A DNA stretch of 64,000 nt, taken from Octopus sinensis. Its lineage: Eukaryota. Positions 13,245 through 62,056 of the stretch are shown in pieces (within the stretch, counting starts at the first letter, position 1; each line of letters opens with the position of its first letter). The stretch is taken from assembly GCF_006345805.1 (NCBI RefSeq), contig NC_043005.1, positions 69,688,001 through 69,752,000 of the forward strand. The letters run 5' to 3'. The notes under the pieces were generated by a model. The model saw only the letters and a list, made by a program, of their open reading frames with translations, searched no databases and was not told where the DNA came from. Position numbers and translations under genes: made by a program.

Positions 13245-13676
13245 TGTGTGTGTGAAGAAGGCGAACGATTGGTCAAGGCTCTGACATTTAATTTCATTTA
13301 ATTCAGTCTAAAAATAGTAAATTAATAGAAAACTGGTCAATGAATTTAAATAGTCCTGCTTTGCCTAATTGTTTGCCTTCCTCACTACTTTAACCGACAC
13401 GTACTAACTCAAAGGTAAGCTAACAACTGCTACATTCTTTCGAACAATATTTTCACACAACCACAACCCCAGCTAGTGTTCTAACTAAAATTTGAGGAAT
13501 TACCTATTGGAGGATTCATAATTAATTATAAAATATATAAAAAATATAAAATATAAATATAAAAATCCAATTATATATATTATATATATAAATATAGATA
13601 TATATATATATATATCTATTATTAGTGAATTGAAGAAAAGGAGTTGAACGAAGATTGAACAGAAATCGTCTTATTA

Positions 13677-13760
13677 CATTCTACACCTGTTTCGAGGGCA
13701 CAATTTACCAAATTCCGATTGAATAAAGAGACCTATTGTGTCTTTCTCTTCAGGAGAAAT
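13677..13760 (-). ncRNA. Mirror hammerhead motif in left arm
   Basis: Minus strand CTGAAGA (13753-47)...GAAA CAGGTG TA GAATG; helix III palindrome carries one substitution. Confidence 0.5.
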
Positions 13761-13915
13761 GGAAATCGTTGGAAAAAACAAAACAGAAACAGAGGCGGAG
13801 CAAAACAAATCGAACGAGGCTCTTAGGAGCCTCGTTCGATTGTTTGCTTCAGGAGCCTCGTTCGATTTGTTTTGCTCCGCCTCTGTTGTTTTTGTTTTTT
13901 CCAACGGATTTCCTA

Positions 13916-14001
13916 TTTCTTCCTGAAGAGAAAAGACACAATATGGTCTCTTTATTCAATAGAATTTGGTAAATTGTGCCTTTCGAAACACGTGTAGAAT
14001 G
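13916..14001 (+). ncRNA. Type I hammerhead ribozyme motif, long helix II
   Basis: CTGAAGA 13923-29; helix II GAAAAGACACAAT/ATTGTGCCTTTC; GAAA 13985-88; palindromic CACGTG; triplet GTA (cut after 13996). Stem I is only about 3 bp (TTC/GAA). Confidence 0.65.
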
Positions 14002-14298
14002 CAATAAAACGATTCTGTTCAATCTTCGTTCAACTCCATTCTTCAATCCACAAGATATTAAAATTCAATTATCCGCACCAACGCACGGTTGCAACACCAT
14101 AGGGTTGTACCTCCAACCGTGCTGGCTTTTGCTGTGATTTTGCTACCAAGGTATCGGTTAAACTTTTGATTAATCTGCAACAAGATTATCATTTTCTATT
14201 TCACAAAAATATATATATAGTATATATATATGTATATATAATATATGTAATATCCAATATATATAATATATATATATATAATAGATATATATATATAG

Positions 14299-16941: not shown

Positions 16942-16977
16942 CAGTAAATGTAATATGTGACAATTATTCGGTAGCCA

Positions 16978-17040
16978 AGATAAAAGTCTGAGTTTCGGAT
17001 GCTGAGGTGGAAATCCACGCCACTATCTCTTCAGTTATCC
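16978..17040 (-). ncRNA. Hammerhead motif (family C), helix III mutated
   Basis: GGATAA CTGAAGA GATAG..GCATCC GAAA CTCAGAC TT TTATC; the base pairing with C15.2 is C instead of G. Confidence 0.45.
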
Positions 17041-17044
17041 GACC

Positions 17045-17106
17045 GGATAACTGAAAAGATGGAGGCGTGGATTTCCACCTCGGCATTCGAAAGTCAGAGT
17101 TTTATC
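17045..17106 (+). ncRNA. Hammerhead motif (family C), core mutated
   Basis: GGATAA CTGAAAA GATGG..GCATTC GAAA GTCAGAG TT TTATC; core G8 is A and the first helix III base is altered. Confidence 0.4.
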
Positions 17107-17229
17107 TGGGCTACCGGAAAATTGTCACATATTACATTGATTGAAAATTCCTCTATTTACATAATATCGAGGTCTCTTTCTTTCTTTTGTTATCGTACCG
17201 TTTGTACCAATATATATCTCTATATATAT

Positions 17230-24064: not shown

Positions 24065-24565
24065 ATATATATATACACACACAATTAAGATTCAGCTGAA
24101 ACAGGTACTCAATTTGATGTTACACGTTATGTCGGGTTACCATGCACACAAAGCAATATTAACTAAAAATCAAACTTGGTACGTAAGTGCCGGCCACATG
24201 ATACTCTTGCAGTGTATGCTGATAATTATATTCAGATCCGTGGATGTGAAACTACGTGAAACCAGTCGAATTGTCCTCAATGTTTGGAGTTCATGAATAC
24301 CTCTGACGAAAACGTATTCTTTGTAATTTTGCTTTCATTAATCAATTAAAGGAGTCTTTGGAAACCGTCGAAATGGAGTGACACATGTACCTCTTTGTTA
24401 CTCACTGATATATATACAATAAAAGCAATTAAGATTCAAGTCAATTCCAATGAATTTACTTGAATGTGGTACTTAACTTAGATGCACCAGAAAACTATAT
24501 GGTGTTAACCATACAGTAATGTGGGGTGATTATAAACGAGAAAGAAGCAACAAGAATGGATTAGT

Positions 24566-24656
24566 TTTTAGTACAATTGTTTCATACAAAGACAGGCTTT
24601 ATTAAAAGTTGCAAAAATTGCAGCAGATAAAAGTGTCCCGTACTCATCAGCTAAAA
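24566..24656 (-). ncRNA. Type I hammerhead ribozyme (left arm), long helix II
   Basis: TTTTAG CTGATGA GTACGGGACA...TGTCTTTGTAT GAAA CAATTG TA CTAAAA: perfect 6-bp stem I, intact core, G.U at the helix II base, palindromic helix III, GUA triplet. Confidence 0.85.
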
Positions 24657-24990
24657 TACATAAGAGATCTCCAAACATCTTAGTGGGTGAGGCTATACTC
24701 ATGAAGTATTGGAGATAATTTCATTAAAAGCAGATTTAGGTTGTAAACAGATTTCCGAAGTTCCTTAATGATGATGCACAGTCTTATCACAGGTTTTAAA
24801 AAAAGCTTATTAGCTTCACAGAGAAGGTGAATTAATCCGTAGTGTAGATATAAATTTCCAGAGATATGTGCATCATCATTAAGGAACTTCGGAAATCTGT
24901 TTACAACCTAAATCTGCTTTTAATGAAATTATCTCCAATACTTCATGAGTATAGCCTCACCCACTAAGATGTTTGGAGAACTCATATGTA

Positions 24991-25081
24991 TTTTAGCTGA
25001 TGAGTACGGGACACTTTTATCTACTGCAAATTTTGCAACTTTTAATAAAGCCTGTCTTTGTAAGAAACAATTGTACTAAAA
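24991..25081 (+). ncRNA. Type I hammerhead ribozyme (right arm), long helix II
   Basis: TTTTAG 24991-96, CTGATGA 24997-25003, 60-nt helix II, GAAA 25064-67, CAATTG, TA (cut after 25075), CTAAAA 25076-81. The helix II base pair is a G-A mismatch. Confidence 0.8.
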
Positions 25082-25119
25082 ACTAATTCATTCTTGTTGC
25101 TTCCTTCTCGTATATATAT

Positions 25120-25184
<65 letters not shown>

Positions 25185-25278
25185 TATATATAATATATAT
25201 ATATACATACATATATATATACATGTATGTATGCATACACACGCTCACATATCCTTACATGTGTTTGAGTGCTTTTTC

Positions 25279-28228: not shown

Positions 28229-28657
28229 ATGATATCAGGACATTATTCTAGAGTAATACAAACTTCGCAAATATCTCTTTCGGGTAAAATCACAAATAGA
28301 AGAGAATATGACCAAAAACTGCGTGTACTGTACTCCATCCTATGCAGCTGTGGTAGGTTATACAAAGGCGAAAAATGCCGCCCCCTCAAAATAAAGGTAG
28401 AGGAATGTCGCAAACATGTGACACGAGGAGATATTGAAAAATCGTGTATAGCTGATCATGTATGGAAACACGGAGACCACCTCCACCTGTGGGATGAAGG
28501 TAAAATAATAGACAGAGAACATCACTGGAAAATACGAAAACCAAAAGTAGCAGCACATATGCTGGGACACAACAAACTCCTAAGCAGACCACGTGCAGAT
28601 ATGAGCAGTATATGGGAACGGGCATTAAAGAAGGATAGAAAAATATTATATTTATAA
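28229..28657 (+). pseudogene. Penelope GIY-YIG endonuclease domain remnant
   Basis: VLYSILCSCGRLYKGEKCRPLKIKVEECRKHV...KSCIADHVWKHGDH..W..GKIIDREHHWKIRK matches the PLE pattern VY.I.C.CG..YIGET.R.L..R..EH...S..A.H. Confidence 0.8.
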
Positions 28658-28687
28658 GCCCTAAAAATTCACTCCCTAATTGCCCAC

Positions 28688-28750
28688 GGGCATATGGCGT
28701 AGTGGTTAAGAGTCCGGGCTACTAACCCCAAGATTCCGAGTTCAATTCTA
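28688..28750 (+). mobile_element. tRNA-like SINE head (Pol III A/B boxes)
   Basis: GGGCATATGGCGTAGTGGTTAAGAG...GAGTTCAATTC followed by (AAT)n; no complete cloverleaf. Confidence 0.65.
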
Positions 28751-31703: not shown

Positions 31704-31768
<65 letters not shown>

Positions 31769-31771
<3 letters not shown>

Positions 31772-31935
31772 TCAAAATAAGCAACAAGAATGACTGCGGT
31801 AATTTGGTGCGATCGTTTCGTACTACGTCATTTTATTAAATGTTGTAAGTAATATTTACAACATTTATTAAAATGATGTAGTACGAAACGATCGTACCAC
31901 ATTATCGGAGTCATTGTGGTTGCTTATTTTGATTA
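31769..31935. mobile_element. Short palindrome carrying the 3' half of a hammerhead
   Basis: About 80-bp inverted arms around a roughly 7-nt loop; GTAC GAAA CGATCG TA at 31881-96; outer ends AAGCAACAAGAATGA shared with the 24.5 kb element; abuts (TA)n. Confidence 0.8.
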
Positions 31936-32031
31936 TAATCACCCCACGGATTTTTGTGGATAACACCATACAGAATTCTTGTGCATCTAAATTAAGTACC
32001 ATATTCATTTAAATCTAAATTTTTGCTGAAC

Positions 32032-34536: not shown

Positions 34537-35422
34537 ATTTGGCTCAAAAGCAAATAGCAAGGCCATGTAGGGGGACATGGACTTAAGTACAGCGTGGTGT
34601 TCCTGTAAAGAGTTCAGGCCACTTGGGGTCCAGGGAGGCTTTGAACAAAGCGGTCGTCGGCATCTTTACCATCTCGTCTGGCAGCTTGTTCCACGGATCC
34701 GCAACCCGGACGAAGAAAGCTCCTCTCCTTCGATTGAGATGAAATCGTCGCAGGAAGAGCTTTTCGGAATGACCCCGCAGCCGACGCTCTGGAGCAGGAG
34801 TGAAGAACAGCTCTTTCGAGAGGTTACACTTTCCGCTTATGATGTTGTGGGCGAGAATGAGATCACTACGGCGGCGGCGTTTTTCAAGAGAATAAAGGTC
34901 GAGCGTCCTCAGCCTTTCTTCGTAGGACAAATTTTTGAGACCATGAACCATGCGGGTAGCCATCTTCTGGACTCTTTCGAGATGCTGTATGTCTTTGAGG
35001 AGATAAGGAGAAGAGGCTTGAATCCCATATTCCAATATGGGTCTCACCAGCGTGACATAGAGTGGTAGGAATATGGCTGCTGTGAGCATTCCGAATGACC
35101 GTCGAATCAAGAACAGAATTCCGCGTGCTTTGTTGGCAGCATGGACGCACTGGGCCGAAGGCGAAAAGGAGGAATCCACCAAGATGTATGTGTGTATATG
35201 TGTGTGTGTTTGTGTGAGTGTGTTTGTCCCCCTAGCATTGCTTGACAACCGATGCTGGTGTGTTTACGTCCCCGTCACTTAACGGTTCGGCAAAAGAGAC
35301 CGATAGAATAAGTACTGGGCTTACAAAGAATAAGTCCCGGGGTCGATTTGCTCGACTAAAGGCGGTGCTCCAGCATGGCCGCAGTCAAATGACTGAAACA
35401 AGTAAAAGAGTAAAAGAGTATA
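34317..35422 (+). mobile_element. SINE family A (tRNA-like head, internal microsatellite, conserved tail) interrupted by a CR1 insertion
   Basis: Head GGCGCAGGAGTGGATGTGTGGTAAG...GGGTTCAGTCCCAC; tail GGCGGTGCTCCAGCATGGCCGCAGTCAAATGACTGAAACAAGTAAAAGAG. Inverted copies at 46 and 61.7 kb. Confidence 0.85.
34503..35183 (-). mobile_element. 5'-truncated CR1-clade LINE 3' end, open ORF2 C-terminus, (TAAC)n tail, 8-bp TSD
   Basis: Uninterrupted LVDSSFSPSAQCVHAANKARGILFLIRRSF...LYVTLVRPILEYG...LERVQKMATRMV..L..LSYEERLRTLDLYSLEKRRRRSDLI...WNKLP. (GTTA)n at 34501-36; ATGTATGT at 34495-502 and 35184-91. Confidence 0.92.
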
Positions 35423-36816
35423 TCATTTAGAATGTCATTTAGAATATATATACATAATAGAAAAATTATATATCGATATGTATATGCATAATACATTTTT
35501 TATCATCGTAAGGGATTGGTTAACGTCTAAAAGTTATATAAGCTGGAGATTTTTCAATTGTATTGCATCAGTCAATTGACTAACGAAATATCTATCATTT
35601 TTTTTACCATGGTCTTAGATTTCATCGTGGTAATGATTTAGTTACTTTTAGATTCATATAAGCCTGTGTATCTCTCTAATAATATATCTATAAATGCGCG
35701 TAAGTATGCGTTTTATACAAATGCTCACACACAAATAAATATTTACGTAATTATATGTATATGCATATATGTGTATATATATATATATATAAAGGTATAT
35801 GCATGTATACGCACATATATATATATATATATGTATTTATATATATATTTATATATATTTATATATATGTATGCCGAACTGACACTTGAAGAAATGCACA
35901 AATTACAACCAATGGTCATTTCGTTAGGTAAGGCAGTAATTTTACACCACGTGCCGCATAGCATACGACCCGGATCTTTCATGAAGTGTTACTCATTTGA
36001 TTGCGTAGGTTTTGCTAATACCTACAAAAATATATGTATGTATACAGCATTAGAGCATTTAGTTCTCATCTCTATCAATGTGTTTTCAACGCCTTAGTCG
36101 TATTTAGTGACAGTTATGGTTTTCATATATATATATATATATATATATAACGGGAAATTTACGAAAATAAACAAAAGACGAAGGCAGGTGGAGTACAAAC
36201 AAACAAATGTATTAGTATGGCGTTCTTCGACAGAAAGATACACAGAAAAGAAACAAGGAGAGAAACAAGGAGAGAAAAAAAAGGCGTGTAGGAGCCAACG
36301 GTCCTTCATGGCGTTCTAAATGCACTTTAGTATAAATACATTTTTGTCTAAACTCACATTGGTCTTAGAACTATTTTGCCTCTAGTATCTAAAAATAAAA
36401 TAGAAAATTATCTAAATAAATCTACTCTAATAATCCTTTCTTGTGCAAAGAACTATCGTCTAATCATTATTTTAGTATAATGACTTGTTTGTTTTACGAG
36501 ACAAACTGTATAAATTTAAGTTTCCTAATAATCCTTTTTGTGCAAAGAACTATCGTATATTGATTCTTTTGGTGTAATGACTTCATTATTTCACGACACT
36601 AACTGCATAAATTTTAGTTTCCCCGTTAATTCGTTTACATATATCTCAATGTTTTTGAGTTGTAAAGCTTATTATTCATTCTTCGTGTTTTAGTTATGTT
36701 AGTGGAGAAGATGATTAAGAGAGAATTTTCATTGTTGCAGGACCATCATACTTGTAATAGCTACGTTCATCAAAACACTGGCCCCAATATATATATATAT
36801 ATATTATATATATATA

Positions 36817-36855
<39 letters not shown>

Positions 36856-36858
<3 letters not shown>

Positions 36859-37075
36859 TGGTAAAAAAGGTAAGATAACAAAAGAAAGAAATAGACCTAT
36901 TATGTAAATAGAGGAATTTATCTGTGAATATAATATGCGACAATTATTCGGTAGCCAAGATAAAACTCTGAGTTTCGGATGCCGAGGTGGAAATCCACAC
37001 CACCATCTCTTCAGTTATCCGGCCATCGGAAAAACGCCTGGGTGGAAATCAACACCACTATCTCTTCAGTTATCC
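36856..37075 (-). mobile_element. Short HHR family C, copy 2 (single arm plus direct partial repeat)
   Basis: Tail and arm as at 17 and 56 kb; GGTGGAAATC.ACACCAC.ATCTCTTCAGTTATCC is repeated directly at about 37041-37075; abuts (TA)n. Confidence 0.85.
36959..37020 (-). ncRNA. Type I hammerhead motif (family C), apparently intact
   Basis: GGATAA CTGAAGA GATGGTGGTGTGGATTTCCACCTCGGCATCC GAAA CTCAGAG TT TTATC: 5-bp stem I, minimal 1-nt-loop helix III, GUU triplet. Confidence 0.7.
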
Positions 37076-38230
37076 ACGGTGAAATATATCCTCTTATTTT
37101 TGTATTTCTACCAGAGAAATCGTAAGAAATTTACGTTCAAAGTTGTATGCACTTCTAGAAGGATAGAAGCTCACGGAATTGAAAATGACATTACACAGGT
37201 GAGCACAGAATTTAAACTGTCAGCTCGAAATGTATCTTCACCTATTTGTGGTAACAATGCTTTGCATTTCTGTTTTTCCGTTTCCGCCAATCGACCTGGA
37301 AAAAATTTCAGCCATTGTGACTTATAACTCTTTATAATAATGATATAGACTTTTCTTTATTCTGTCGAAAAGTGAACGCTTTGGTCTTTGCGCCTGTTGC
37401 TGTTGTACCAATAGGACTGCAATACTTGAAACAAAGTGCACCTGAAAATGTATTTCCGTTTATTGAATACATAGAAAATACTGTTGAAAATGGAATGCTA
37501 CGACGAAATTGAAGACGGATAAAGACATTATTATCAATACCTGAATGGAATGTTTACGATTGCACACGTGATGGTAAAGCACGTTCAATTACTTCTATTG
37601 AAGCATGGCATTGGCCATTTTGGGTCTTCGATCACATTCGAGTCCATATAACGTTCTTGATGTTCTAAGAAGAGAAGAGCAATTCATCACAGCAAGGTTA
37701 TCTCAACTTTACGTAAGGACAAGCCCCAAGAAGAAAAGTACCATAAGCAACAAGAAGAGAGAAAAGAATATTACAAGTTGTCAATTTCAAGAATCGATCA
37801 GTGGAACATTACCTTCCTAATATTGCTTATAATCTGGGTTCTTTGTAAATTTCATTTTCATTCGTATTGATGTCCTAATTGTCGATACAACTGTTACTTA
37901 AACATGAATGGTGCAATTACGTCGCAAGAAATGGTCTACTGGTGCCGTCGCTAGGGGAAGGTAGGGGTCGCTCTCCTGCACACAATTTTATTAGATGCAG
38001 CTATGCATCGTTAACCACCTAGTGATGTCTTCTTGGGGTTAAACATTGCAATAGAATCCACTCGAACGGATAGCCAAGTTAAAGTGGTTACGAATATTAC
38101 TTGTCATTTTCATTTTTTTTATACTGATAAATCTATATTCTATTTGAAGCATATATATTACGCATATATGAAATTTATTTATCAATAGATATAATAACAC
38201 AAGTTTCGTTATACGTAACCTAAGTGTCAC

Positions 38231-42770: not shown

Positions 42771-42865
<95 letters not shown>

Positions 42866-42985
42866 CAATTTAGGAGTGACCCTAACAGGTCATTCGTCCA
42901 CCAGAAAGAGCAGCCATAACTCACACCGCCAAGTAGTAGTAATTCAGAAATTAGGTGAAAATTTAAAAACATTTACCCTAATTCA

Positions 42986-43088
42986 TCTTTTAGACGTTGC
43001 AACGTTTCTGTGTCATTAATGATTAAATTAGCTTAATTAAAATAAAATTAAGCCAAACTACCATAGGTTACACTTCATCAGTAAAAGA
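42986..43088 (-). ncRNA. Type I hammerhead ribozyme, unit 1, long helix II
   Basis: TCTTTTA CTGATGA A GTGT...(66 nt helix II region)...ACAC A GAAA CGTTGCAACG TC TAAAAGA: perfect 7-bp stem I, palindromic helix III, GUC triplet, A.A at the helix II base. Confidence 0.8.
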
Positions 43089-43457
43089 CCTGGGAGAGAC
43101 AAATATACACGAGGCGTCTGTATCGATGCCTACGGGATATCTGACTTAAAATTTTCAAGACTGCCGCATTCGCGCCAAACTTATCAGCAGTAAATATAAA
43201 CTGCCGATTCAATCTCAGAATTAATCAGAAAATTATCAATTAGTCAATTTAGGGTAGCAAAAAATTCAATAGAAATTTATCGCTACCAGCGGCCTGGTGG
43301 AAAAGAGAAGGTAGTCAACGACTACATATATAAATATAACAATTTAGGAGTGACCCTAACAGGTCATTCGTCCACCAGAAAGAGCAGCCATACTCACACG
43401 CCAAGTAGTAGTAATTCAGAAATTAGGTGAAAATTTAAAAACATTTACCCTAATTCA

Positions 43458-43560
43458 TCTTTTAGACGTTGCAACGTTTCTGTGTCATTAATGATTAAAT
43501 TAGCTTAATTAAAATAAAATTAAGCCAATCTACCATAGGTTACACTTCATCAGTAAAAGA
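43458..43560 (-). ncRNA. Type I hammerhead ribozyme, unit 2, long helix II
   Basis: Same as unit 1; helix II contains a 15-bp stem TAGATTGGCTTAATT/AATTAAGCTAATTTA (with G.U pairs). Confidence 0.8.
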
Positions 43561-44049
43561 CCTGGGAGAGACAAATATACACGAGGCGTCTGTATCGATG
43601 CCTACGGGATATCTGACTTACACTTTTCAAGACTGCCGCATTCGCGCCAAACTTATCAGCAGTAAATATAAACTGCCGATTCAATCTCAGAATTAATCAG
43701 AAAATTATCAATTAGTCAATTTAGGGTAGCAAAAAATTCAATAGAAATTTATCGCTACCAGCGGCCTGGTGGAAAAGAGAAGGTAGTCAATGACACAGAA
43801 ACGTTGCAACGTCTAAAAGATGAATTAGGGTAAATGTTTTTAAATTTTCACCTAATTTCTGAATTACTACTACTTGGCGGTGTGAGTTATGGCTGCTCTT
43901 TCTGGTGGACGAATGACCTGTTAGGGTCACTCCTAAATTGTTATATTTATATATGTAGTCGTTGACTACCTTCTCTTTTCCACCAGGCCGCTGGTAGCGA
44001 TAAATTTCTATTGAATTTTTTGCTACCCTAAATTGACTAATTAAATATA

Positions 44050-45974: not shown

Positions 45975-46198
45975 TTCTTTTATTCTTTTAATTGTTTCAG
46001 TCATTTGATTGCGGCAATGTTGGAGCACCGCCTTTATTTTAAAAAATCGCCCCCAGTACTTATGCTTTACAAGCCTAGTACTTATTCTATCGGGTTCTTT
46101 TGCCAAACCGCTAAGGTACGGGGACAGGAACACACCAACATAGGTTGTCAAACGATGGAGGGCAGAAAAACAGACAGACTAACATACATACAAACACA

Positions 46199-46285
<87 letters not shown>

Positions 46286-46431
46286 CTACAGGTTCCTTTA
46301 AGTCTCCGTCTACCAAATCCACTCACAAGGATTTGATAGGCTCGAGATATAGTTGAAGACACTTGCCCAAGGTGCCACGCAGTGGGACAGAACTCGGAAC
46401 CATGTGGTTGGTAAGCAAGCTACTAACCACA
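45975..46431 (-). mobile_element. SINE family A
   Basis: Reverse complement of the 34.3/35.2 kb head and tail, with (CA)n inside. Confidence 0.85.
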
Positions 46432-48370: not shown

Positions 48371-48460
48371 CATACAACAAGAAATAATGTTTGTCTCCTT
48401 TTATAGAAAGAAAAGGGTTTGAGGACTGCAAAAGAAGAGCTCAAATATAAAAGAAGATAA

Positions 48461-50648
48461 AGAAGCGTAGATTATAGAACAAACGTTAAATCTGGGTCAA
48501 CGACTTTACATACAACACCACCACACAAACATTTAATCATATATAAAAATCTCCATGGTTCCCAAACACATAAAATTAATACATATACATAAAATCACAG
48601 AAGATAAAGATATATAATAGAATAAAATGCAAATAGAACGGCCTATCAAAAAGTTAAATATATACGACTAAAACATCAAAACTAACAAAAAACCTAATAG
48701 ACAAATGTAAATTAAGTACAGGTGAAAATAAAATAAAATAAAATAAATGTCCACCAGCTAAAACATTTTTAACAGACTATTAAATTTTTAAAAAATTAAG
48801 TTTTTGTTTTTTAAATATTTGAAAAAGCATTTGGAAAAAGTCTTGCACTTCACTCATACAAGTACGTCCGGCTTTCACAGGTCAAATTCATATACATCTT
48901 GAAAAAAGTCAGTTACATCCCTCACACAAAAACGTCCAAAAGTTCATAATAAGCAGACTTCCACAGCTAAATTTCATATACATCTTGAAAAAAGTCAGTT
49001 ACTTCCCTCAAACAAGTACGTCCAAAAGTTCGTATTAAGCAGACTGCACAGGTCAAATTCAACATTCACACATATATATATGGCCATTTCGTGAGCTCAC
49101 CAACTGATTTTCTTTTCATTACAGTGCATCACGGCTATGACCCTTTCATTAGGATGAACAGGAAACAGGAAGCACGCATAGTGATTCTTTATTACCCACA
49201 ACGCGCACACACAGAGAGGATGATACAATACATGTGGGGACATATAACAATTAAAATAATAAAATTACGTTAAACCTGAATGAAAAGTGAAATAATATAT
49301 GGAAACGATCTAGCTACCCCAACTCAGTAGCATCATTTACTTCCCTCTAGATCCAGTTCATGTTGATTCCATAACGTTCTTCCAATTCCTTAATTACAAT
49401 CTCATTTGGCACATTCTTTATATCGCAAATCACGTTTCTGCATCTAACACTTTTCTTTACATTCTTTAATCTCTCTCATCCGATATTTCGGCGCCAATAC
49501 ACTTGCGACCATATTTTCCTTTTTTATCTTTTTATCTCTTTTCAAACTAACAAATCTCATGTCTCTCCATTGCGACAATTTCTCTACCAGTTTCTTATCC
49601 ATACCCTTAAACTAAACACAAGCATAACACATGGAAGGGGAGTTTTGTGAACTTTTGTGTGTTTGCACTTTTTTCGTTTTGGCGTCGTGGGGAGTGGGTG
49701 GGTTTGGTGTCTGCAGTGGGAAGATGGGGTTGTGAAGGTATGAGTGTTGTGGGTTGGGTACTGGTTGGGGTTCACTTTGACTGCCCTTCTTCTTCTCCCT
49801 CTTTTCTTGCCTTCCAGCACTCTTCATACTTCTTCATCGTGTGTTTCATCTTTATCTTCCAACATCTTCTCCTTCTAGGCTTTCTCTTGGGCTTGCTTTT
49901 TTTAGGGCGGTCCGCTCTAATGTAGCCATTCAGGCCACATTTACATCACATTTGGCTATATTTATAGTAGCGAGAGGTTCTGCCCTCCACTCACACTTTC
50001 ATCACCGTTTCTACTACTGTCACCGTTTCTGCCAATTTTTCCAAATTTTCTTGTGAAGATTGTAGTATCATATCTAGATTTTCCCTCAACAATTTGTTAC
50101 TTCAGTCTCCGTAGCTTGGAGCACAGCCACCTCTTTCTCACTTCCAAGAAGCACTTTCCCGCATCCAAGCCACGTCTATATCGGGGGGATTCCCTCCACC
50201 CTGACCCTGGAATTTCTTATTCCAAGGTATGTGGGTAAGAGGATCAATCTTTCTGTTTTCATTGCATTCAATTGCATTCAATTATTTTTAATGCTGTAGT
50301 ATTTAAAATAAGTCTTCTATCAAGTTCTCTTACTCAGTAATGCCAAATTTAGCCTCCGGTATTGCATCTATAAATAGAAGCAGATAAAATGGGGAAGTGC
50401 ACTGTAGATGTTATTCTGATGAAAAACCCTGTTCTGGGGAGGTAATTTCTGATACGCCTAAGGTTAGTGATGACAACATGACGCCCCCACCGGGTGTATC
50501 GAACCCCAATAATGAGAAATGTGAAGGAGTGAATGTGGGAAACCTAACAAGTACTATTAGTAGTAGAAATAAGGTTAGGGATGGCCCTGGGAAATCATGT
50601 AATTTTAGAAATCCTGAACTATGTCCCCTTGATCGATTCTGTCTAATT

Positions 50649-50702
<54 letters not shown>

Positions 50703-51874
50703 CCGTTGTTAAAGATGCGGATAATTTAAGTAAGTTTAATATAAATAGTTCAGTAAATTTTAAGGCTAGATACAGGACCCATATGAGCTCGTTTTCAAAC
50801 GAAAAATATTGTAGCCCTACCACACACGCAGCTTATTTATGCGATCTAAAGAGGAATAATAAGTGTTATTCTCTGGAATGGTCCGTTATTTCGAGAGCCC
50901 CTTACTTTAGAGTAAATAAGTGTCATTTTTGTGTAAAAAAATCCCTTGCCTTTTGGACCAATAACTTTGAATAGATTTACTGAGGTGACCGCTTTTTGCA
51001 ACCACAGGTTTTCGTCCACCTTTTTGAAAGTGTATAGAAATAAAAGTAGTTATTATAAAATCGTTTAGCGTTAGAGGATTTGAAACCGGCAAGGTTGAAT
51101 TTCTGTTAACTACAGAAACATGAGTATTTAACAATAGACTGTTTTTTTTTTCGAAAATCTGGACTAGTTCACTGATGGGATTTTCTTTTAAATCATATTA
51201 TGCTTTTCATACAAAATAATTCGATCTGTGCGTGTCTCCTGTTTCCTGTTTATCCTGATGAGAGGGTCATTACTGTGATGCACTTTAGTATAAATAAACT
51301 GCGATGGTGAGCTCCGGATATGGCCATAGCTATATGGGAATGTTGAATTTGACCTGTGAAGTCTGCTTATTATGAACTTTTGGAAGTACTTGTGTGAGGG
51401 GGAGTAAAAGACGTCTTTCAAGATGTATGTGAATTTGACCCGTGGAGGTCTGTTTACTTATGGACTTTGGAAATACTTGTATGAGTGAAGTAAAAGGTTT
51501 TTTTCAAATGTTTCAAATACATTTTAAAAGCTTTTTAAAGAAACTAAGAGAAATATTTTTTTTAAATATTTTAATCGTCTGATAAAACTTTTAAAAGTTG
51601 TTGGACATTCGTTTTATTTTAGTTTATTTATTTTATTTTATCTATTAGGATTTTGGTAGTTTTGAATTTTTAGCCGTTTAGATTTAACTTTTTGATAGGC
51701 CGTTCTATTTCTATTTTATTCGATTGTATAATTTTATCTTCTGTGGTTTTATGTATTATTTTTATGTGTTTGGGAACCATGGTGATTTTTTATACATGAT
51801 TAAATGTTTGAGGGTCGTGTTGTATGTAAAGTAGTTGACCCAAATTTAATGCTTGTTCTATAACCAATGCTTCT
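48461..51874 (+). mobile_element. Old Penelope-like element with about 700-bp inverted terminal (pLTR-like) repeats
   Basis: 48461-49178 is a diverged reverse complement of 51229-51874 (shared GATAGGCCGTTCTATTT, TATGTGTTTGGGAACCATGG, about 85-bp subrepeats). It encloses a GIY-YIG remnant. Confidence 0.8.
50400..51000 (+). pseudogene. Penelope GIY-YIG region remnant split by (TA)n
   Basis: SCNFRNPELCPLDRFCL (CNC....CPL.G.CL motif), then NFKARYRTHMSSFSNEKY..PT..A.Y.CDLK......LEWSVISRA.Y...KCHFCVK. Confidence 0.75.
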
Positions 51875-51937
51875 ATATATATATATATATATATACATAC
51901 AAATAAATAACATACTTATATATATATATATATATAA

Positions 51938-55915: not shown

Positions 55916-56022
55916 ACCCATGGTATTATATATATATGTTTGCGTGTGTATGTGTGTGTGTGCATGTGTGTGCGTGCGCGTGTGTGTGTGAATACAATAT
56001 GTGACAATAATTCGGTAGCCAT

Positions 56023-56084
56023 TCTAAAACTCCGAGTTTCGGATGTCGGGCCGGAAACCCACGCCGCCATCTCTTCAGTTATCC
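56023..56084 (-). ncRNA. Hammerhead motif (family C), left arm
   Basis: GGATAA CTGAAGA GATGG..GACATCC GAAA CTCGGAG TT TTAGA: intact core, weakened stem I. Confidence 0.6.
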
Positions 56085-56121
56085 GGCCATAAAAAAAAAA
56101 TGGTATGAAATATCGATGGCC

Positions 56122-56183
56122 GGATAACTGAAGAGATGGTTGCCTGGGTTTCTGCCCTGACATCCGAAACTCGGAGTTTTAGC
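56122..56183 (+). ncRNA. Hammerhead motif (family C), right arm
   Basis: CTGAAGA 56128-34, GAAA 56166-69, CTCGGAG, TT, then TTAGC pairing with GGATAA (one mismatch). Confidence 0.6.
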
Positions 56184-56326
56184 ATGGTTACCAAATTATT
56201 GTCACATATTATATTCACAGATAAATCCCTCTATTTACATAATATCGAGGCCTCTTTCATTCTTTTGTTGTCTTACCTTTTCTATCAATATATATAAATA
56301 TATATATATATACATTTATATATATA

Positions 56327-61609: not shown

Positions 61610-61661
61610 TAGATAGATAGATATAAGGATAGATAGACAGACGTACATATATGTACAAACA

Positions 61662-61866
61662 TTTACTCTCTTTACTCTCTTTTACTTGTTTCAGTCATTT
61701 GATTGTGGCCATACTGGACCACCGACTTTAGTCGAGCAGATCGACCCCAGGACATATTCTGTGTAAGTCTAGTACTTATTATATCGGTCTGTTTTGCCGA
61801 ACCGCTAAGTTTCGGGGACGTAAACACACCAGCATCATTTGTCAAGCGATGTTGGGGGGGGGGTCA

Positions 61867-61906
<40 letters not shown>

Positions 61907-62056
61907 CATACATATATACGACGGATTTCTTTCAGTTTCCGTCTACCAAATTCACTCAAAAGGCTTTGGTCGGCCCGAGGTTCTAGTAGAAGTCATTTGC
62001 CCAAAGTGCCAAGAAGTGGGACTGAACCCGCAACCATGTGGTTGCTTAGCAAGCTA
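61662..62056 (-). mobile_element. SINE family A
   Basis: TTTACTTGTTTCAGTCATTTGATTGTGGCCATACTGGA...(CA)n...CCGTCTACCAAATTCACTCA...GGACTGAACCCGCAACCATGTGGTTG. Confidence 0.85.

What the first reader, a model, noticed from the sequence alone, without database searches (positions are those of the whole stretch)
24536..25111. Twin-hammerhead fold-back element: two near-intact ribozymes facing outward from an 86-bp spacer
Seen: 245-bp inverted arms with about 7 substitutions. Each arm encodes a full type I HHR (TTTTAG-CTGATGA-60 nt helix II-GAAA-CAATTG-TA-CTAAAA), one per strand. Known: Penelope-like elements (PLEs) carry HHRs with palindromic helix III in their pseudo-LTRs and often have an inverted 5' terminal repeat. 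Inference: this is a non-coding PLE-derived unit, not a Tc1 MITE. Divergent transcription from the spacer would give two self-cleaving RNAs. Read-through transcription would instead fold a 245-bp duplex that masks the ribozyme and could feed ADAR or Dicer. A small element with two such alternative RNA states is the best candidate here for an undescribed system.
Basis: partly seen in the sequence, partly recalled or inferred. Interest (0 to 1): 0.9.

Follow-up and report, generated by a model that had tools for sequence, protein, structure and literature searches.

The report
Head-to-head hammerhead retroelement insertion
The inverted repeat with a hammerhead-ribozyme motif in each arm is real, but it is the ordinary footprint of a Penelope-type retroelement that inserts two truncated copies head to head into a TA microsatellite, not a new two-state RNA device.

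Summary
Observation confirmed. Positions 24531-24780 and 24867-25116 are 250-nt inverted arms (97% complementary) with an 86-nt spacer. Reading outward, each arm carries a complete type I hammerhead (HHR) core: TTTTAG-CTGATGA-60 nt-GAAA-C-AATT-G-T-A|CTAAAA, predicted cut after 25075.

The "twin-ribozyme device" reading is not supported.
- The insertion is asymmetric. It runs from about 24418 to 25111, because the inverted copy carries about 113 nt of extra 3' "tail".
- A diverged relative at 31765-32031 has the same tail/inverted-arm/forward-arm layout. Its arms are only about 85 nt and are truncated inside the ribozyme.
- Three other HHR families in the window (13617-14209; 42865-44042; 16942-17210, 36850-37081 and 55988-56290) show the same design. 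Each has head-to-head or tandem copies, a tail at one end, and (TA)n at both ends.

This matches published Penelope-like element (PLE) and non-LTR retrozyme insertion architecture. The fold-back is a by-product of integration, and both ribozyme copies are inherited.

Caveats:
- Rfam hammerhead models do not score these motifs.
- The 10.1-11.1 pair is G.A or G.U in the two arms.
- No copies from outside the window could be retrieved.

Verdict: new member of a known kind, low to moderate interest.

The parts
24408..24416 (.). Short (TA) run at the left edge of the insertion. Probably a remnant of the target microsatellite.
   Evidence: Sequence read. The boundary is inferred from the end of homology with the relative at 31765-32031 and is accurate to about +/-35 nt.
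24418..24535 (-). 'Tail' X: about 113-118 nt of 3' extension carried only by the inverted (minus-strand) copy. It contains two small hairpins (ATTCAAGT/ACTTGAAT and TATGGTGTTAACCATA).
   Evidence: 80% identical over 82 nt to the equivalent flank of the relative at 31933-32014. It is absent after the forward copy, which ends CTCG|(TA)n where the inverted copy continues CTCGTTTATAATCACCCC.
24536..24780 (-). Left arm: a 5'-truncated copy on the minus strand, with its 3' end pointing left.
24566..24656 (-). HHR motif of the left arm. Predicted cut between 24572 and 24571 on the minus strand. The 10.1-11.1 pair is G.U.
   Evidence: Descriptor hit. The HHR-constrained fold is -10.1 kcal/mol against an MFE of -12.8. 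The helix II segment alone folds as one long imperfect hairpin, -9.9 kcal/mol.
24781..24866 (.). 86-nt spacer. Most simply it is the extra 5' sequence of whichever copy was truncated less; which copy that is cannot be decided.
   Evidence: No second copy of this stretch exists in the window. Inference.
24867..25111 (+). Right arm: a 5'-truncated copy on the plus strand, with its 3' end abutting (TA)n.
24991..25081 (+). HHR motif of the right arm. Predicted cut after A17 at 25075. The 10.1-11.1 pair is G.A (25004/25063).
   Evidence: The HHR-constrained fold is -8.4 kcal/mol against an MFE of -11.2. The isolated motif folds no better than shuffles, z = +0.5.
25089..25102 (+). 3' box CATTCTTGTTGCTT, identical in both arms (also at 24545-24558 on the minus strand) and in the 72%-identical relative (31779-31792 on the minus strand). 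Candidate recognition or priming region for the reverse transcriptase.
   Evidence: 8 matches with up to 2 mismatches against 0.74 expected. The three exact matches are these copies. A similar T-rich box ends family 4, which is only suggestive. The function is inferred.
25112..25235 (.). (TA)n microsatellite directly abutting the forward copy. This is the target sequence.
31765..32031 (-). Diverged relative of the same family. Layout: (TA)n, tail X' (32031-31938), inverted arm (31937-31853), forward arm (31852-31767), (TA)n. The arms are about 85 nt, 88% alike, and truncated inside helix II, so there is no CUGAUGA box. It keeps GTAC-GAAAC (C at 11.1) and a palindromic helix III, ACGATCGT.

Best explanation
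The locus is one integration event of a short, non-coding, hammerhead-bearing retroelement of the Penelope-like-element (PLE) / animal 'non-LTR retrozyme' kind. It landed in a (TA)n microsatellite.

Inferred mechanism, by analogy with the one PLE studied in vitro:
- The element's RNA is copied by a PLE reverse transcriptase/GIY-YIG endonuclease supplied in trans.
- That enzyme cuts AT-rich DNA and extends both target strands. Two cDNA copies therefore grow toward each other and are joined head to head after 5' truncation.
- This gives the 250-nt arms, plus 86 nt from the longer copy.
- Reverse transcription can start at two internal sites of the template. One copy therefore ends at CTCG|(TA)n and the other carries about 113 nt more (the 'tail', 24418-24535).

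Each copy includes the element's type I hammerhead because the ribozyme lies only 36 nt from the proximal 3' end. Two outward-facing ribozymes are therefore a by-product of integration, not a designed pair.

In the source element the ribozyme has a 2-bp helix III with the palindromic loop ACAAUUGU. It would act as a dimer between tandem units, or with protein help, to process multimeric transcripts.

The two copies at this locus have drifted 3% apart with no sign of constraint. They are most likely inert relics.

Whether the source was a retrozyme-like short element or the pLTR end of a full-length PLE cannot be decided from this window.
For: Shown directly:
- The arms, spacer and HHR motifs are as described.
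- The insertion is asymmetric, with a tail homologous to that of a second, diverged copy.
- That second copy (31765-32031) has the same tail/inverted-arm/forward-arm/(TA)n layout, but with 85-nt arms truncated inside the ribozyme.
- Family 2 (42865-44042) is a 472-nt tandem with one HHR per unit. It also has a head-to-head inverted copy that starts inside helix II and extends about 85-100 nt further 3' than the array. (TA)n lies on both sides.
- Family 3 (13617-14209) and family 4 (16942-17210, 55988-56290) are further fold-backs with an HHR in each arm, a one-sided tail and (TA)n flanks. Family 4 also occurs as a non-inverted partial tandem, at 36850-37081.
- HHR-like motifs with a palindromic helix III number 5, in 3 unrelated families, against 0.037 expected.
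- Between the two family-1 subfamilies the helix III loop changed AATT->GATC, keeping self-complementarity.
- Predicted helix III self-duplexes are -6.4 to -17.9 kcal/mol.
- 3 of the 7 arm differences fall in the HHR, against 2.6 expected, so there is no post-insertion constraint.

From the literature:
- HHRs lie in PLE pLTRs, have palindromic helix III, work as dimers, and occur as dual motifs on opposite strands (PMC4209133).
- Inverted 5'-truncated copies, a tail at one end only, and (TA)n targets are described for PLEs (PMC8557442).
- A PLE protein cleaves and extends both strands of AT-rich DNA. It starts reverse transcription at two internal sites that delimit the tail, and uncleaved RNA is the substrate (PMC11167929).
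- Animal retrozymes are non-autonomous PLE derivatives (bioRxiv 10.64898/2026.07.22.740005; PMC7229834).
Against: - No Rfam hammerhead model matches family 1 or family 2, even at E<=10.
- The isolated motif does not fold into the HHR shape as its MFE and is no more stable than shuffles.
- Helix II is unusually long (60 nt) and imperfect. Its closing pair is G.A or G.U instead of G-C.
- The tail is about 113 nt, against the 30-40 nt described for PLEs.
- No autonomous PLE was demonstrated. The only candidate, ORF 28229-28657, has a GIY-YIG-like Cys pattern by eye but gets no support from Pfam, NCBIfam or PDB searches.
- No copies outside the window could be found. Conservation therefore rests on a handful of sequences.
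- Self-cleavage and transcription are untested.
Confidence: 0.8

Rival explanations
1. A functional two-state RNA element. Divergent transcription from the spacer gives two self-cleaving RNAs. Read-through gives a 250-bp hairpin that masks the ribozymes and feeds Dicer or ADAR.
For: A read-through transcript would fold into a near-perfect 250-bp hairpin (-416.9 kcal/mol, z = -48). Both arms keep the complete catalytic core. Fold-backs of this kind recur in the window.
Against: - Arm length and ribozyme completeness vary freely among related insertions. Selection is therefore not acting on a twin-ribozyme unit.
- The spacer has no second copy and no sign of conservation.
- The arms diverge at the same rate inside and outside the HHR, and one change hits 11.1.
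- Each divergent transcript would hold a single HHR with a 2-bp helix III. That form is reported inactive as a monomer (PMC4209133).
- No promoter or expression data exist.
Confidence: 0.05
2. A fold-back DNA transposon or MITE that targets TA, in which the HHR-like string is a chance or irrelevant motif.
For: There are long inverted arms next to TA repeats. The shorter relative keeps the outer parts of the arms, as internally deleted MITEs do. Rfam does not recognise a hammerhead.
Against: - The conserved insertion unit is asymmetric, with the tail on one side in both family-1 copies. Its two termini are not inverted repeats of each other.
- Family 4 occurs with the same 3' end but without a fold-back.
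- Family 2 is a head-to-tail tandem.
- Complete HHR cores with a palindromic helix III occur in three unrelated families, against 0.037 expected.
Confidence: 0.05
3. The arms are two 5'-truncated copies of a full-length, autonomous PLE (its pLTR/3' end), not of a short non-coding retrozyme-like element.
For: PLE insertions are heavily 5'-truncated and the HHR lies in the pLTR (PMC8557442, PMC4209133). Only 336 + 113 nt of the family is visible here. No direct tandem of this family is seen.
Against: - The other HHR families in the window are demonstrably short. Family 2 has a 472-nt tandem unit without an ORF, and family 4 units are about 175 nt.
- No reverse-transcriptase-like ORF adjoins any of them.
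- The PLE-endonuclease-like ORF at 28229-28657 shows no sequence similarity to family 1.
Confidence: 0.25
4. The palindrome is an assembly artefact (a fold-back chimera).
For: PLE tandem/inverted structures are known to trouble assemblies (PMC8557442).
Against: The arms differ at 7 positions, and one side carries a unique tail. Independent loci in the same window have the same architecture with different sequences and ages: arm identities are 74-99%.
Confidence: 0.03

Closest known systems
Penelope-like elements (PLEs): pLTR hammerheads and complex tandem/inverted insertions (Cervera & de la Pena 2014, PMC4209133; Craig et al. 2021, PMC8557442; Frangieh et al. 2024, PMC11167929)
   Same: - Type I HHR close to the 3' end, with a short helix III and a palindromic loop.
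- Head-to-head inverted 5'-truncated copy.
- Extra 'tail' at one end only.
- Insertion into (TA)n / AT-rich DNA.
- Dual HHRs on opposite strands 100-700 bp apart have already been described.
   Different: - There is no RT/GIY-YIG ORF in or next to the element.
- The tail is about 113 nt instead of 30-40 nt.
- Helix II is 60 nt, whereas PLE min-HHRs have 6-8 bp.
- The 10.1-11.1 pair is not G-C in these two copies.
Animal non-LTR retrozymes (Cervera & de la Pena 2020, PMC7229834; Li, Clavereau & Pollet 2026, bioRxiv 10.64898/2026.07.22.740005)
   Same: These are short (51-972 bp) non-coding units, each with a type I HHR that works as a dimer, derived from PLE pLTRs. Family 2 of this window (472-nt tandem, one HHR per unit) fits the definition directly.
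   Different: The reported locus has no head-to-tail tandem, only an inverted pair. It cannot release a unit-length RNA by two cuts on one strand. Circular RNAs are untested.
Twin-priming 5' inversions of LINE-1
   Same: Both target strands prime reverse transcription, giving inverted segments joined in the middle.
   Different: L1 twin priming inverts different, essentially non-overlapping parts of one template. Here the two arms are copies of the same 3' region, as in PLEs.
Fold-back elements and TA-targeting MITEs (Tc1/mariner-derived)
   Same: Long inverted arms, small size, TA-rich flanks.
   Different: The conserved unit is asymmetric and has no terminal inverted repeats. Relatives share a fixed 3' end with a variable 5' structure. 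The elements carry ribozyme motifs.

Membership tests
Hammerhead ribozyme, type I | Catalytic core C3-U4-G5-A6-N7-G8-A9 ... G12-A13-A14, A15.1-U16.1 pair, and H17 (not G) before the cut | tested here: met
   CTGATGA at 24997-25003, GAA at 25064-25066, A15.1 at 25067 with U16.1 at 25074, A17 at 25075. The same holds on the minus strand at 24656-24566.
Hammerhead ribozyme, type I | Open helix I formed by the 5' and 3' ends | tested here: met
   UUUUAG pairs with CUAAAA, 6 bp.
Hammerhead ribozyme, type I | Helix II closed by the conserved G10.1-C11.1 pair | tested here: not met
   G.A in the right arm (25004/25063) and G.U in the left arm. The diverged relative has C at 11.1 in both arms, so the ancestral family probably had G-C. 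A mismatch at the base of helix II has a precedent in axolotl HHR_Amex2 (PMC7229834).
Hammerhead ribozyme, type I | Match to curated covariance models (Rfam hammerhead families) | tested here: not met
   No hammerhead hit at gathering score over the whole window, nor at E<=10 on 24400-25250 or 42900-43650. The 55-66-nt helix II insertions and the 2-bp helix III are the likely reasons. PLE HHRs are known to escape canonical descriptors (PMC4209133).
Hammerhead ribozyme, type I | Helices supported by covariation among homologues | tested here: inconclusive
   There are only two near-identical arms plus one 3'-half relative. One double change (AATT->GATC) keeps the helix III palindrome, which would happen by chance roughly 1 time in 10. 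For family 4, RNAalifold recovers helices I and II but finds no compensatory pairs.
Hammerhead ribozyme, type I | Site-specific self-cleavage | not testable with these tools
   Needs in vitro transcription as a monomer, as a dimer, and with PLE protein.
Penelope-like element (autonomous) | Single ORF with a telomerase-like RT and a GIY-YIG endonuclease | tested here: not met
   No ORF longer than 44 aa lies in 24418-25111. The element is therefore not a PLE proper. At most it is a truncated end or a non-autonomous derivative.
Penelope-like element (insertion signature) | Inverted 5'-truncated copy adjoining the 5' end, a tail at only one end, and an AT-rich/(TA)n target | tested here: met
   for this locus. 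The same signature appears in three other families. The features are as defined in PMC8557442 and PMC11167929. The tail is longer than described (about 113 nt against 30-40 nt).
Non-LTR retrozyme | Head-to-tail tandem of short non-coding units, each with a type I HHR | tested here: not met
   No direct repeat of family 1 exists in the window. The feature is met by family 2 at 42865-43794, which has 2.0 units of 472 nt.
Non-LTR retrozyme | Expression as unit-length circular RNA | not testable with these tools
   Needs RNA-seq with back-splice-type junction reads, or RNase R northern blots.
Tc1/mariner-type MITE | Terminal inverted repeats at both true ends, flanked by a TA duplication | tested here: not met
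   The true left end (tail, about 24418) and the right end (25111) are not inverted repeats of each other. The flanks are TA repeats, so a duplication cannot be read.

The most novel reading that the evidence does not exclude
The integration mechanism lays down head-to-head copies so often (at least five fold-back or inverted insertions in this 64-kb window). These elements could therefore routinely create long-hairpin loci. Read-through transcripts from such loci would be processed into small RNAs that silence the same ribozyme-bearing family, so the element would plant its own silencing triggers.

A lesser novelty is that this genome appears to carry a lineage-specific HHR variant. Three of the four families have a 55-66-nt helix II, and two families have non-canonical pairs at its base.
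Probability: 0.1. Interest if true: 0.5.

Novelty: new member of a known kind. Interest (0 to 1): 0.25.

Why it matters
It gives a clear worked example of PLE-type integration by short hammerhead-bearing elements. Four families in one window share the same design: head-to-head or tandem copies, a one-sided tail, and (TA)n at both ends. That supports the idea that animal retrozymes use PLE machinery, and that PLE enzymes extend both target strands in vivo as they do in vitro.

It also flags hammerheads with very long helix II that current Rfam models miss. This matters for ribozyme annotation. It does not reveal a new kind of system.

Tried and rejected
- **Rfam.** I searched the whole window at gathering score, and at E<=10 around family 1 and family 2. 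There was no hammerhead hit, only spurious microsatellite miRNA-like hits.
- **Unconstrained folding.** The isolated motif gives no HHR shape and z is about +0.4.
- **Scans for outside copies.** I scanned metagenome, prokaryote-genome and viral contigs with CTGATGAGTAC-N40-65-GAAACAATTGT. The three metagenome hits have no helix I and no further similarity, so they are chance matches. The other two collections gave none.
- **Exact look-up of ten window ORFs**, including the 44-aa ORFs over the HHR. None is in the protein collection, so copies could not be fetched through proteins.
- **Homologue search with the PLE-endonuclease-like ORF 28229-28657.** It returned one unnamed 78%-identical protein on a 621-bp metagenome contig. 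That says nothing about the organism.
- **Pfam, NCBIfam and PDB searches for the same ORF.** None supports GIY-YIG. Its PLE identity stays a motif-level impression.
- **Other matches to the 3' box** (2986, 19039, 33727, 37745). They have no (TA)n or HHR context and I rejected them as chance.
- **A possible solo tail copy at 24076-24150.** Only about 20 nt are convincingly similar, so I did not count it.
- **3' box similarity between families 1 and 4.** It is T-rich and suggestive only.
- **Organism.** It could not be identified. The sequence is about 33% GC and dense in (TA)n, (TG)n and (GA)n, consistent with an invertebrate animal genome.
Full report
**1. The observation**

The repeat finder reports inverted arms at 24531-24780 and 24867-25116. 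They are 250 nt long, 97% complementary and 86 nt apart. Aligning the right arm with the reverse complement of the left shows seven substitutions within 24867-25111, at 24980, 24984, 25023, 25030, 25063, 25088 and 25104. Identity is lost beyond CTCGT: the right side runs into (TA)n and the left side into unique sequence.

On the plus strand it reads:
- UUUUAG, 24991-24996
- CUGAUGA, 24997-25003
- a 60-nt segment, 25004-25063
- G12-A13-A14, 25064-25066
- A15.1-C-AAUU-G-U16.1, 25067-25074
- A17, 25075
- CUAAAA, 25076-25081

The predicted cut after 25075 is therefore placed correctly. The mirror motif lies at 24656-24566 on the minus strand.

**2. Is it more than chance?**

I wrote a descriptor with these requirements: CUGANGA; a helix II base of at least 3 bp; GAA; an A15.1-U16.1 pair; H17; and helix I.
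- In Markov-simulated copies of the window it gives 0.04-0.08 hits per 64 kb, and 0.007 or fewer when helix III must also be palindromic.
- A second version has helix I of at least 3 bp, a perfect even-length palindrome from 15.1 to 16.1, and one-nucleotide slack at the base of helix II. It expects 0.037 hits. It finds five, in three unrelated repeat families.

The motif is therefore not a chance string.

There are weaknesses.
- No Rfam hammerhead model matches, at gathering score or at E<=10.
- The isolated 106-nt RNA does not adopt the hammerhead shape as its minimum-energy fold and is no more stable than shuffles.
- The pair at the base of helix II is G.A in the right arm and G.U in the left, not G-C.
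- With the core held open, the left-arm version folds into a hammerhead shape at -10.1 kcal/mol against an MFE of -12.8. Its 60-nt helix II segment forms one long imperfect hairpin on its own.

**3. The real extent of the element**

A sensitive self-search of the window found a 72%-identical relative on the minus strand at 31765-32031. Reading its sense strand, it consists of:
- (TA)n;
- a roughly 94-nt segment;
- TATA;
- an inverted arm of about 85 nt;
- a forward arm of about 85 nt ending CATTCTTGTTGCTTATTTTGAG;
- (TA)n.

The 94-nt segment is homologous (80% over 82 nt) to the sequence immediately left of the reported left arm, 24454-24535. The insertion at the reported locus therefore does not end at 24531. 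It runs from about 24418, next to a short TA run, to 25111, and it is asymmetric:
- The inverted (minus-strand) copy continues CTCGTTTATAATCACCCC... for about 113 nt.
- The forward copy stops at CTCG and meets (TA)n.

The relative's arms begin inside the helix II loop, so it has no CUGAUGA box at all. It keeps GUAC-GAAAC, with C at 11.1, and a palindromic helix III, ACGAUCGU. The reported element has ACAAUUGU there. That is a double change preserving self-complementarity.

**4. The same design in other families of the window**

Family 2 lies on the minus strand.
- It has 2.0 head-to-tail units of 472 nt, 99% identical.
- Each unit has GUCUUUUA-CUGAUGA-66 nt-GAAA-CGUUGCAACG-U-C|UAAAAGAU, at 43561-43457 and 43089-42985.
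- Its hammerhead-constrained fold is within 0.7 kcal/mol of the MFE.
- Cutting at both sites would release a 472-nt RNA, which is the definition of a non-LTR retrozyme.
- At its 5' side sits an inverted copy (plus strand, 43789-44042). This copy starts inside helix II and extends about 85-100 nt further 3' than the array.
- Both outer ends abut (TA)n.

Family 3 (13617-14209) is a fold-back with arms of about 210 nt.
- Each arm has CUGAAGA-55 nt-GAAA-C-ACGU-G-U-A|GAAUG. The G10.1-C11.1 pair is canonical.
- It has a roughly 160-nt tail on one side and (TA)n at both ends.

Family 4 has GGAUAA-CUGAAGA, a 31-nt segment holding helix II plus one unpaired C, then GAAA-CUCAGAG-U-U|UUAUCU.
- It occurs as fold-backs at 16942-17210 and 55988-56290.
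- It also occurs as a partial head-to-tail tandem, not a fold-back, at 36850-37081.
- Every copy has the same roughly 70-80-nt tail ending in (TA)n.

Across these loci the constant features are a fixed 3' end, a one-sided tail and a (TA)n target. The 5' structure varies: the length of the inverted copy, tandem or not, ribozyme complete or cut.

**5. What this means**

These are the published hallmarks of Penelope-like element integration.
- HHRs lie in the pLTRs, have a short palindromic helix III and are thought to act as dimers. Dual motifs 100-700 bp apart on opposite strands were noted in Schistosoma (PMC4209133).
- Craig et al. (PMC8557442) describe heavy 5' truncation and partial tandems. 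They also describe an inverted 5'-truncated copy at the 5' end that creates inverted repeats, a tail present at only one end, and (TA)n as the preferred target of several clades.
[quoted passage not shown] It starts reverse transcription at two internal sites that delimit the tail, and it uses uncleaved RNA as its substrate. Its HHR cleaves only with protein present (PMC11167929).
- Animal retrozymes are regarded as non-autonomous PLE derivatives (PMC7229834; bioRxiv 10.64898/2026.07.22.740005).

The reported fold-back is therefore best read as one integration event. Two cDNAs were primed from the two target strands, 5'-truncated and joined head to head. The ribozyme sits only 36 nt from the proximal 3' end, so both copies include it.

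Shown: the anatomy, its recurrence, and the statistical excess of HHR motifs. Inferred: that a PLE enzyme did this, and that the ribozyme works as a dimer in the source element.

**6. State of these two copies**

The arms differ by 2.9%. Three of the seven differences lie in the 91-nt HHR, against 2.6 expected, and one is at 11.1. There is no sign of constraint since insertion.

A read-through transcript would fold into a 250-bp hairpin (-416.9 kcal/mol). That follows trivially from the inverted repeat. Nothing available here speaks to transcription, a promoter in the spacer, editing or small RNAs.

**7. Rivals**

- **Purpose-built two-state device.** This is contradicted by the free variation of arm length and ribozyme completeness among relatives.
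- **TA-targeting MITE or fold-back transposon.** This is contradicted by the asymmetric unit, the non-inverted true termini and the non-fold-back copy of family 4.
- **Truncated ends of a full-length PLE, not a short element.** This cannot be excluded for family 1 (about 0.25). The only PLE-like coding trace in the window is ORF 28229-28657, which has a C-x-C inside a GIY...YxG-like stretch. It has no profile support and no similarity to family 1.
- **Assembly artefact.** This is unlikely given the diverged arms, the unique tail and the independent loci with the same design.

**8. Limits**

No eukaryotic genome collection was available. Pattern scans of metagenomes, prokaryotic genomes and viral contigs gave only chance matches, and protein routes to other copies failed. 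The comparative evidence therefore comes from this window alone. The organism is unidentified; the sequence is about 33% GC and dense in microsatellites.

**9. Verdict**

The "undescribed system" reading is not. This is a new member, or several new families, of a known kind. The modest points of interest are the very long helix II that defeats the Rfam models and a clean natural record of two-strand priming by PLE-type machinery.

Noticed in passing
window 42865-44042 (minus strand array; inverted copy on plus strand 43789-44042): A retrozyme-like tandem of 2.0 units of 472 nt, 99% identical. Each unit has a type I HHR (43561-43457 and 43089-42985) with an 8-bp helix I, a 66-nt helix II and the 12-nt palindrome ACGUUGCAACGU. 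There is also a head-to-head inverted copy truncated inside helix II. (TA)n lies on both sides. Two cuts would release a 472-nt RNA (43464-42993).
   Followed up: yes
window 13617-14209: A third HHR family in a fold-back with arms of about 210 nt (87% alike). Each arm has CTGAAGA-55 nt-GAAAC-ACGT-GTA|GAATG with a canonical G10.1-C11.1 pair but only about 3 bp of helix I. It has a roughly 160-nt one-sided tail with a GCACGGTTG...CAACCGTGC hairpin, and (TA)n at both ends.
   Followed up: partly
window 16942-17210, 55988-56290 and 36850-37081 (minus strand): A fourth HHR family of about 175-nt units: GGATAA-CTGAAGA-31 nt-GAAA-CTCAGAG-TT|TTATCT. There is an extra C between helix II and G12, and helix III is an odd-length near-palindrome. 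Two copies are fold-backs whose arms start at the 5' edge of the ribozyme. One copy is a partial tandem. The right arm of the 16942-17210 copy has core mutations (CTGAAAA, GAAAG).
   Followed up: partly
window 28229-28657 (+): A 142-aa ORF with a GIY-YIG-like stretch containing C-x-C (VLYSILCSCGRLYKGEK...R...E..H), reminiscent of PLE endonucleases. Pfam, NCBIfam and PDB searches give no support. The only homologue found is an unnamed 78%-identical protein (P0001) on a 621-bp metagenome contig.
   Followed up: partly
window 28685-28750 (+): A tRNA-like stretch (GGCGTAGTGGTTAAGAG...GATTCCGAGTTCAATTC) just after that ORF. It is probably the head of a tRNA-derived SINE. ARAGORN calls no tRNA in the window.
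   Followed up: no
window 34583-35248 (-): A 221-aa ORF that looks like the C-terminal part of a LINE-type reverse transcriptase. It has no Pfam or NCBIfam match. Related repeat pieces lie at about 35185-35423, 45976-46431 and 61661-62056.
   Followed up: no
whole window: The window is extremely dense in (TA)n, (TG)n and (GA)n microsatellites at about 33% GC. Most long 'ORFs' are microsatellite translations. Rfam miRNA-like hits (mir-297 and others) at 25176-25244 are microsatellite artefacts.
   Followed up: partly
window 48457-49181 and 51226-51878: A pair of roughly 700-bp inverted repeats (74% alike) about 2 kb apart. I did not examine them.
   Followed up: no
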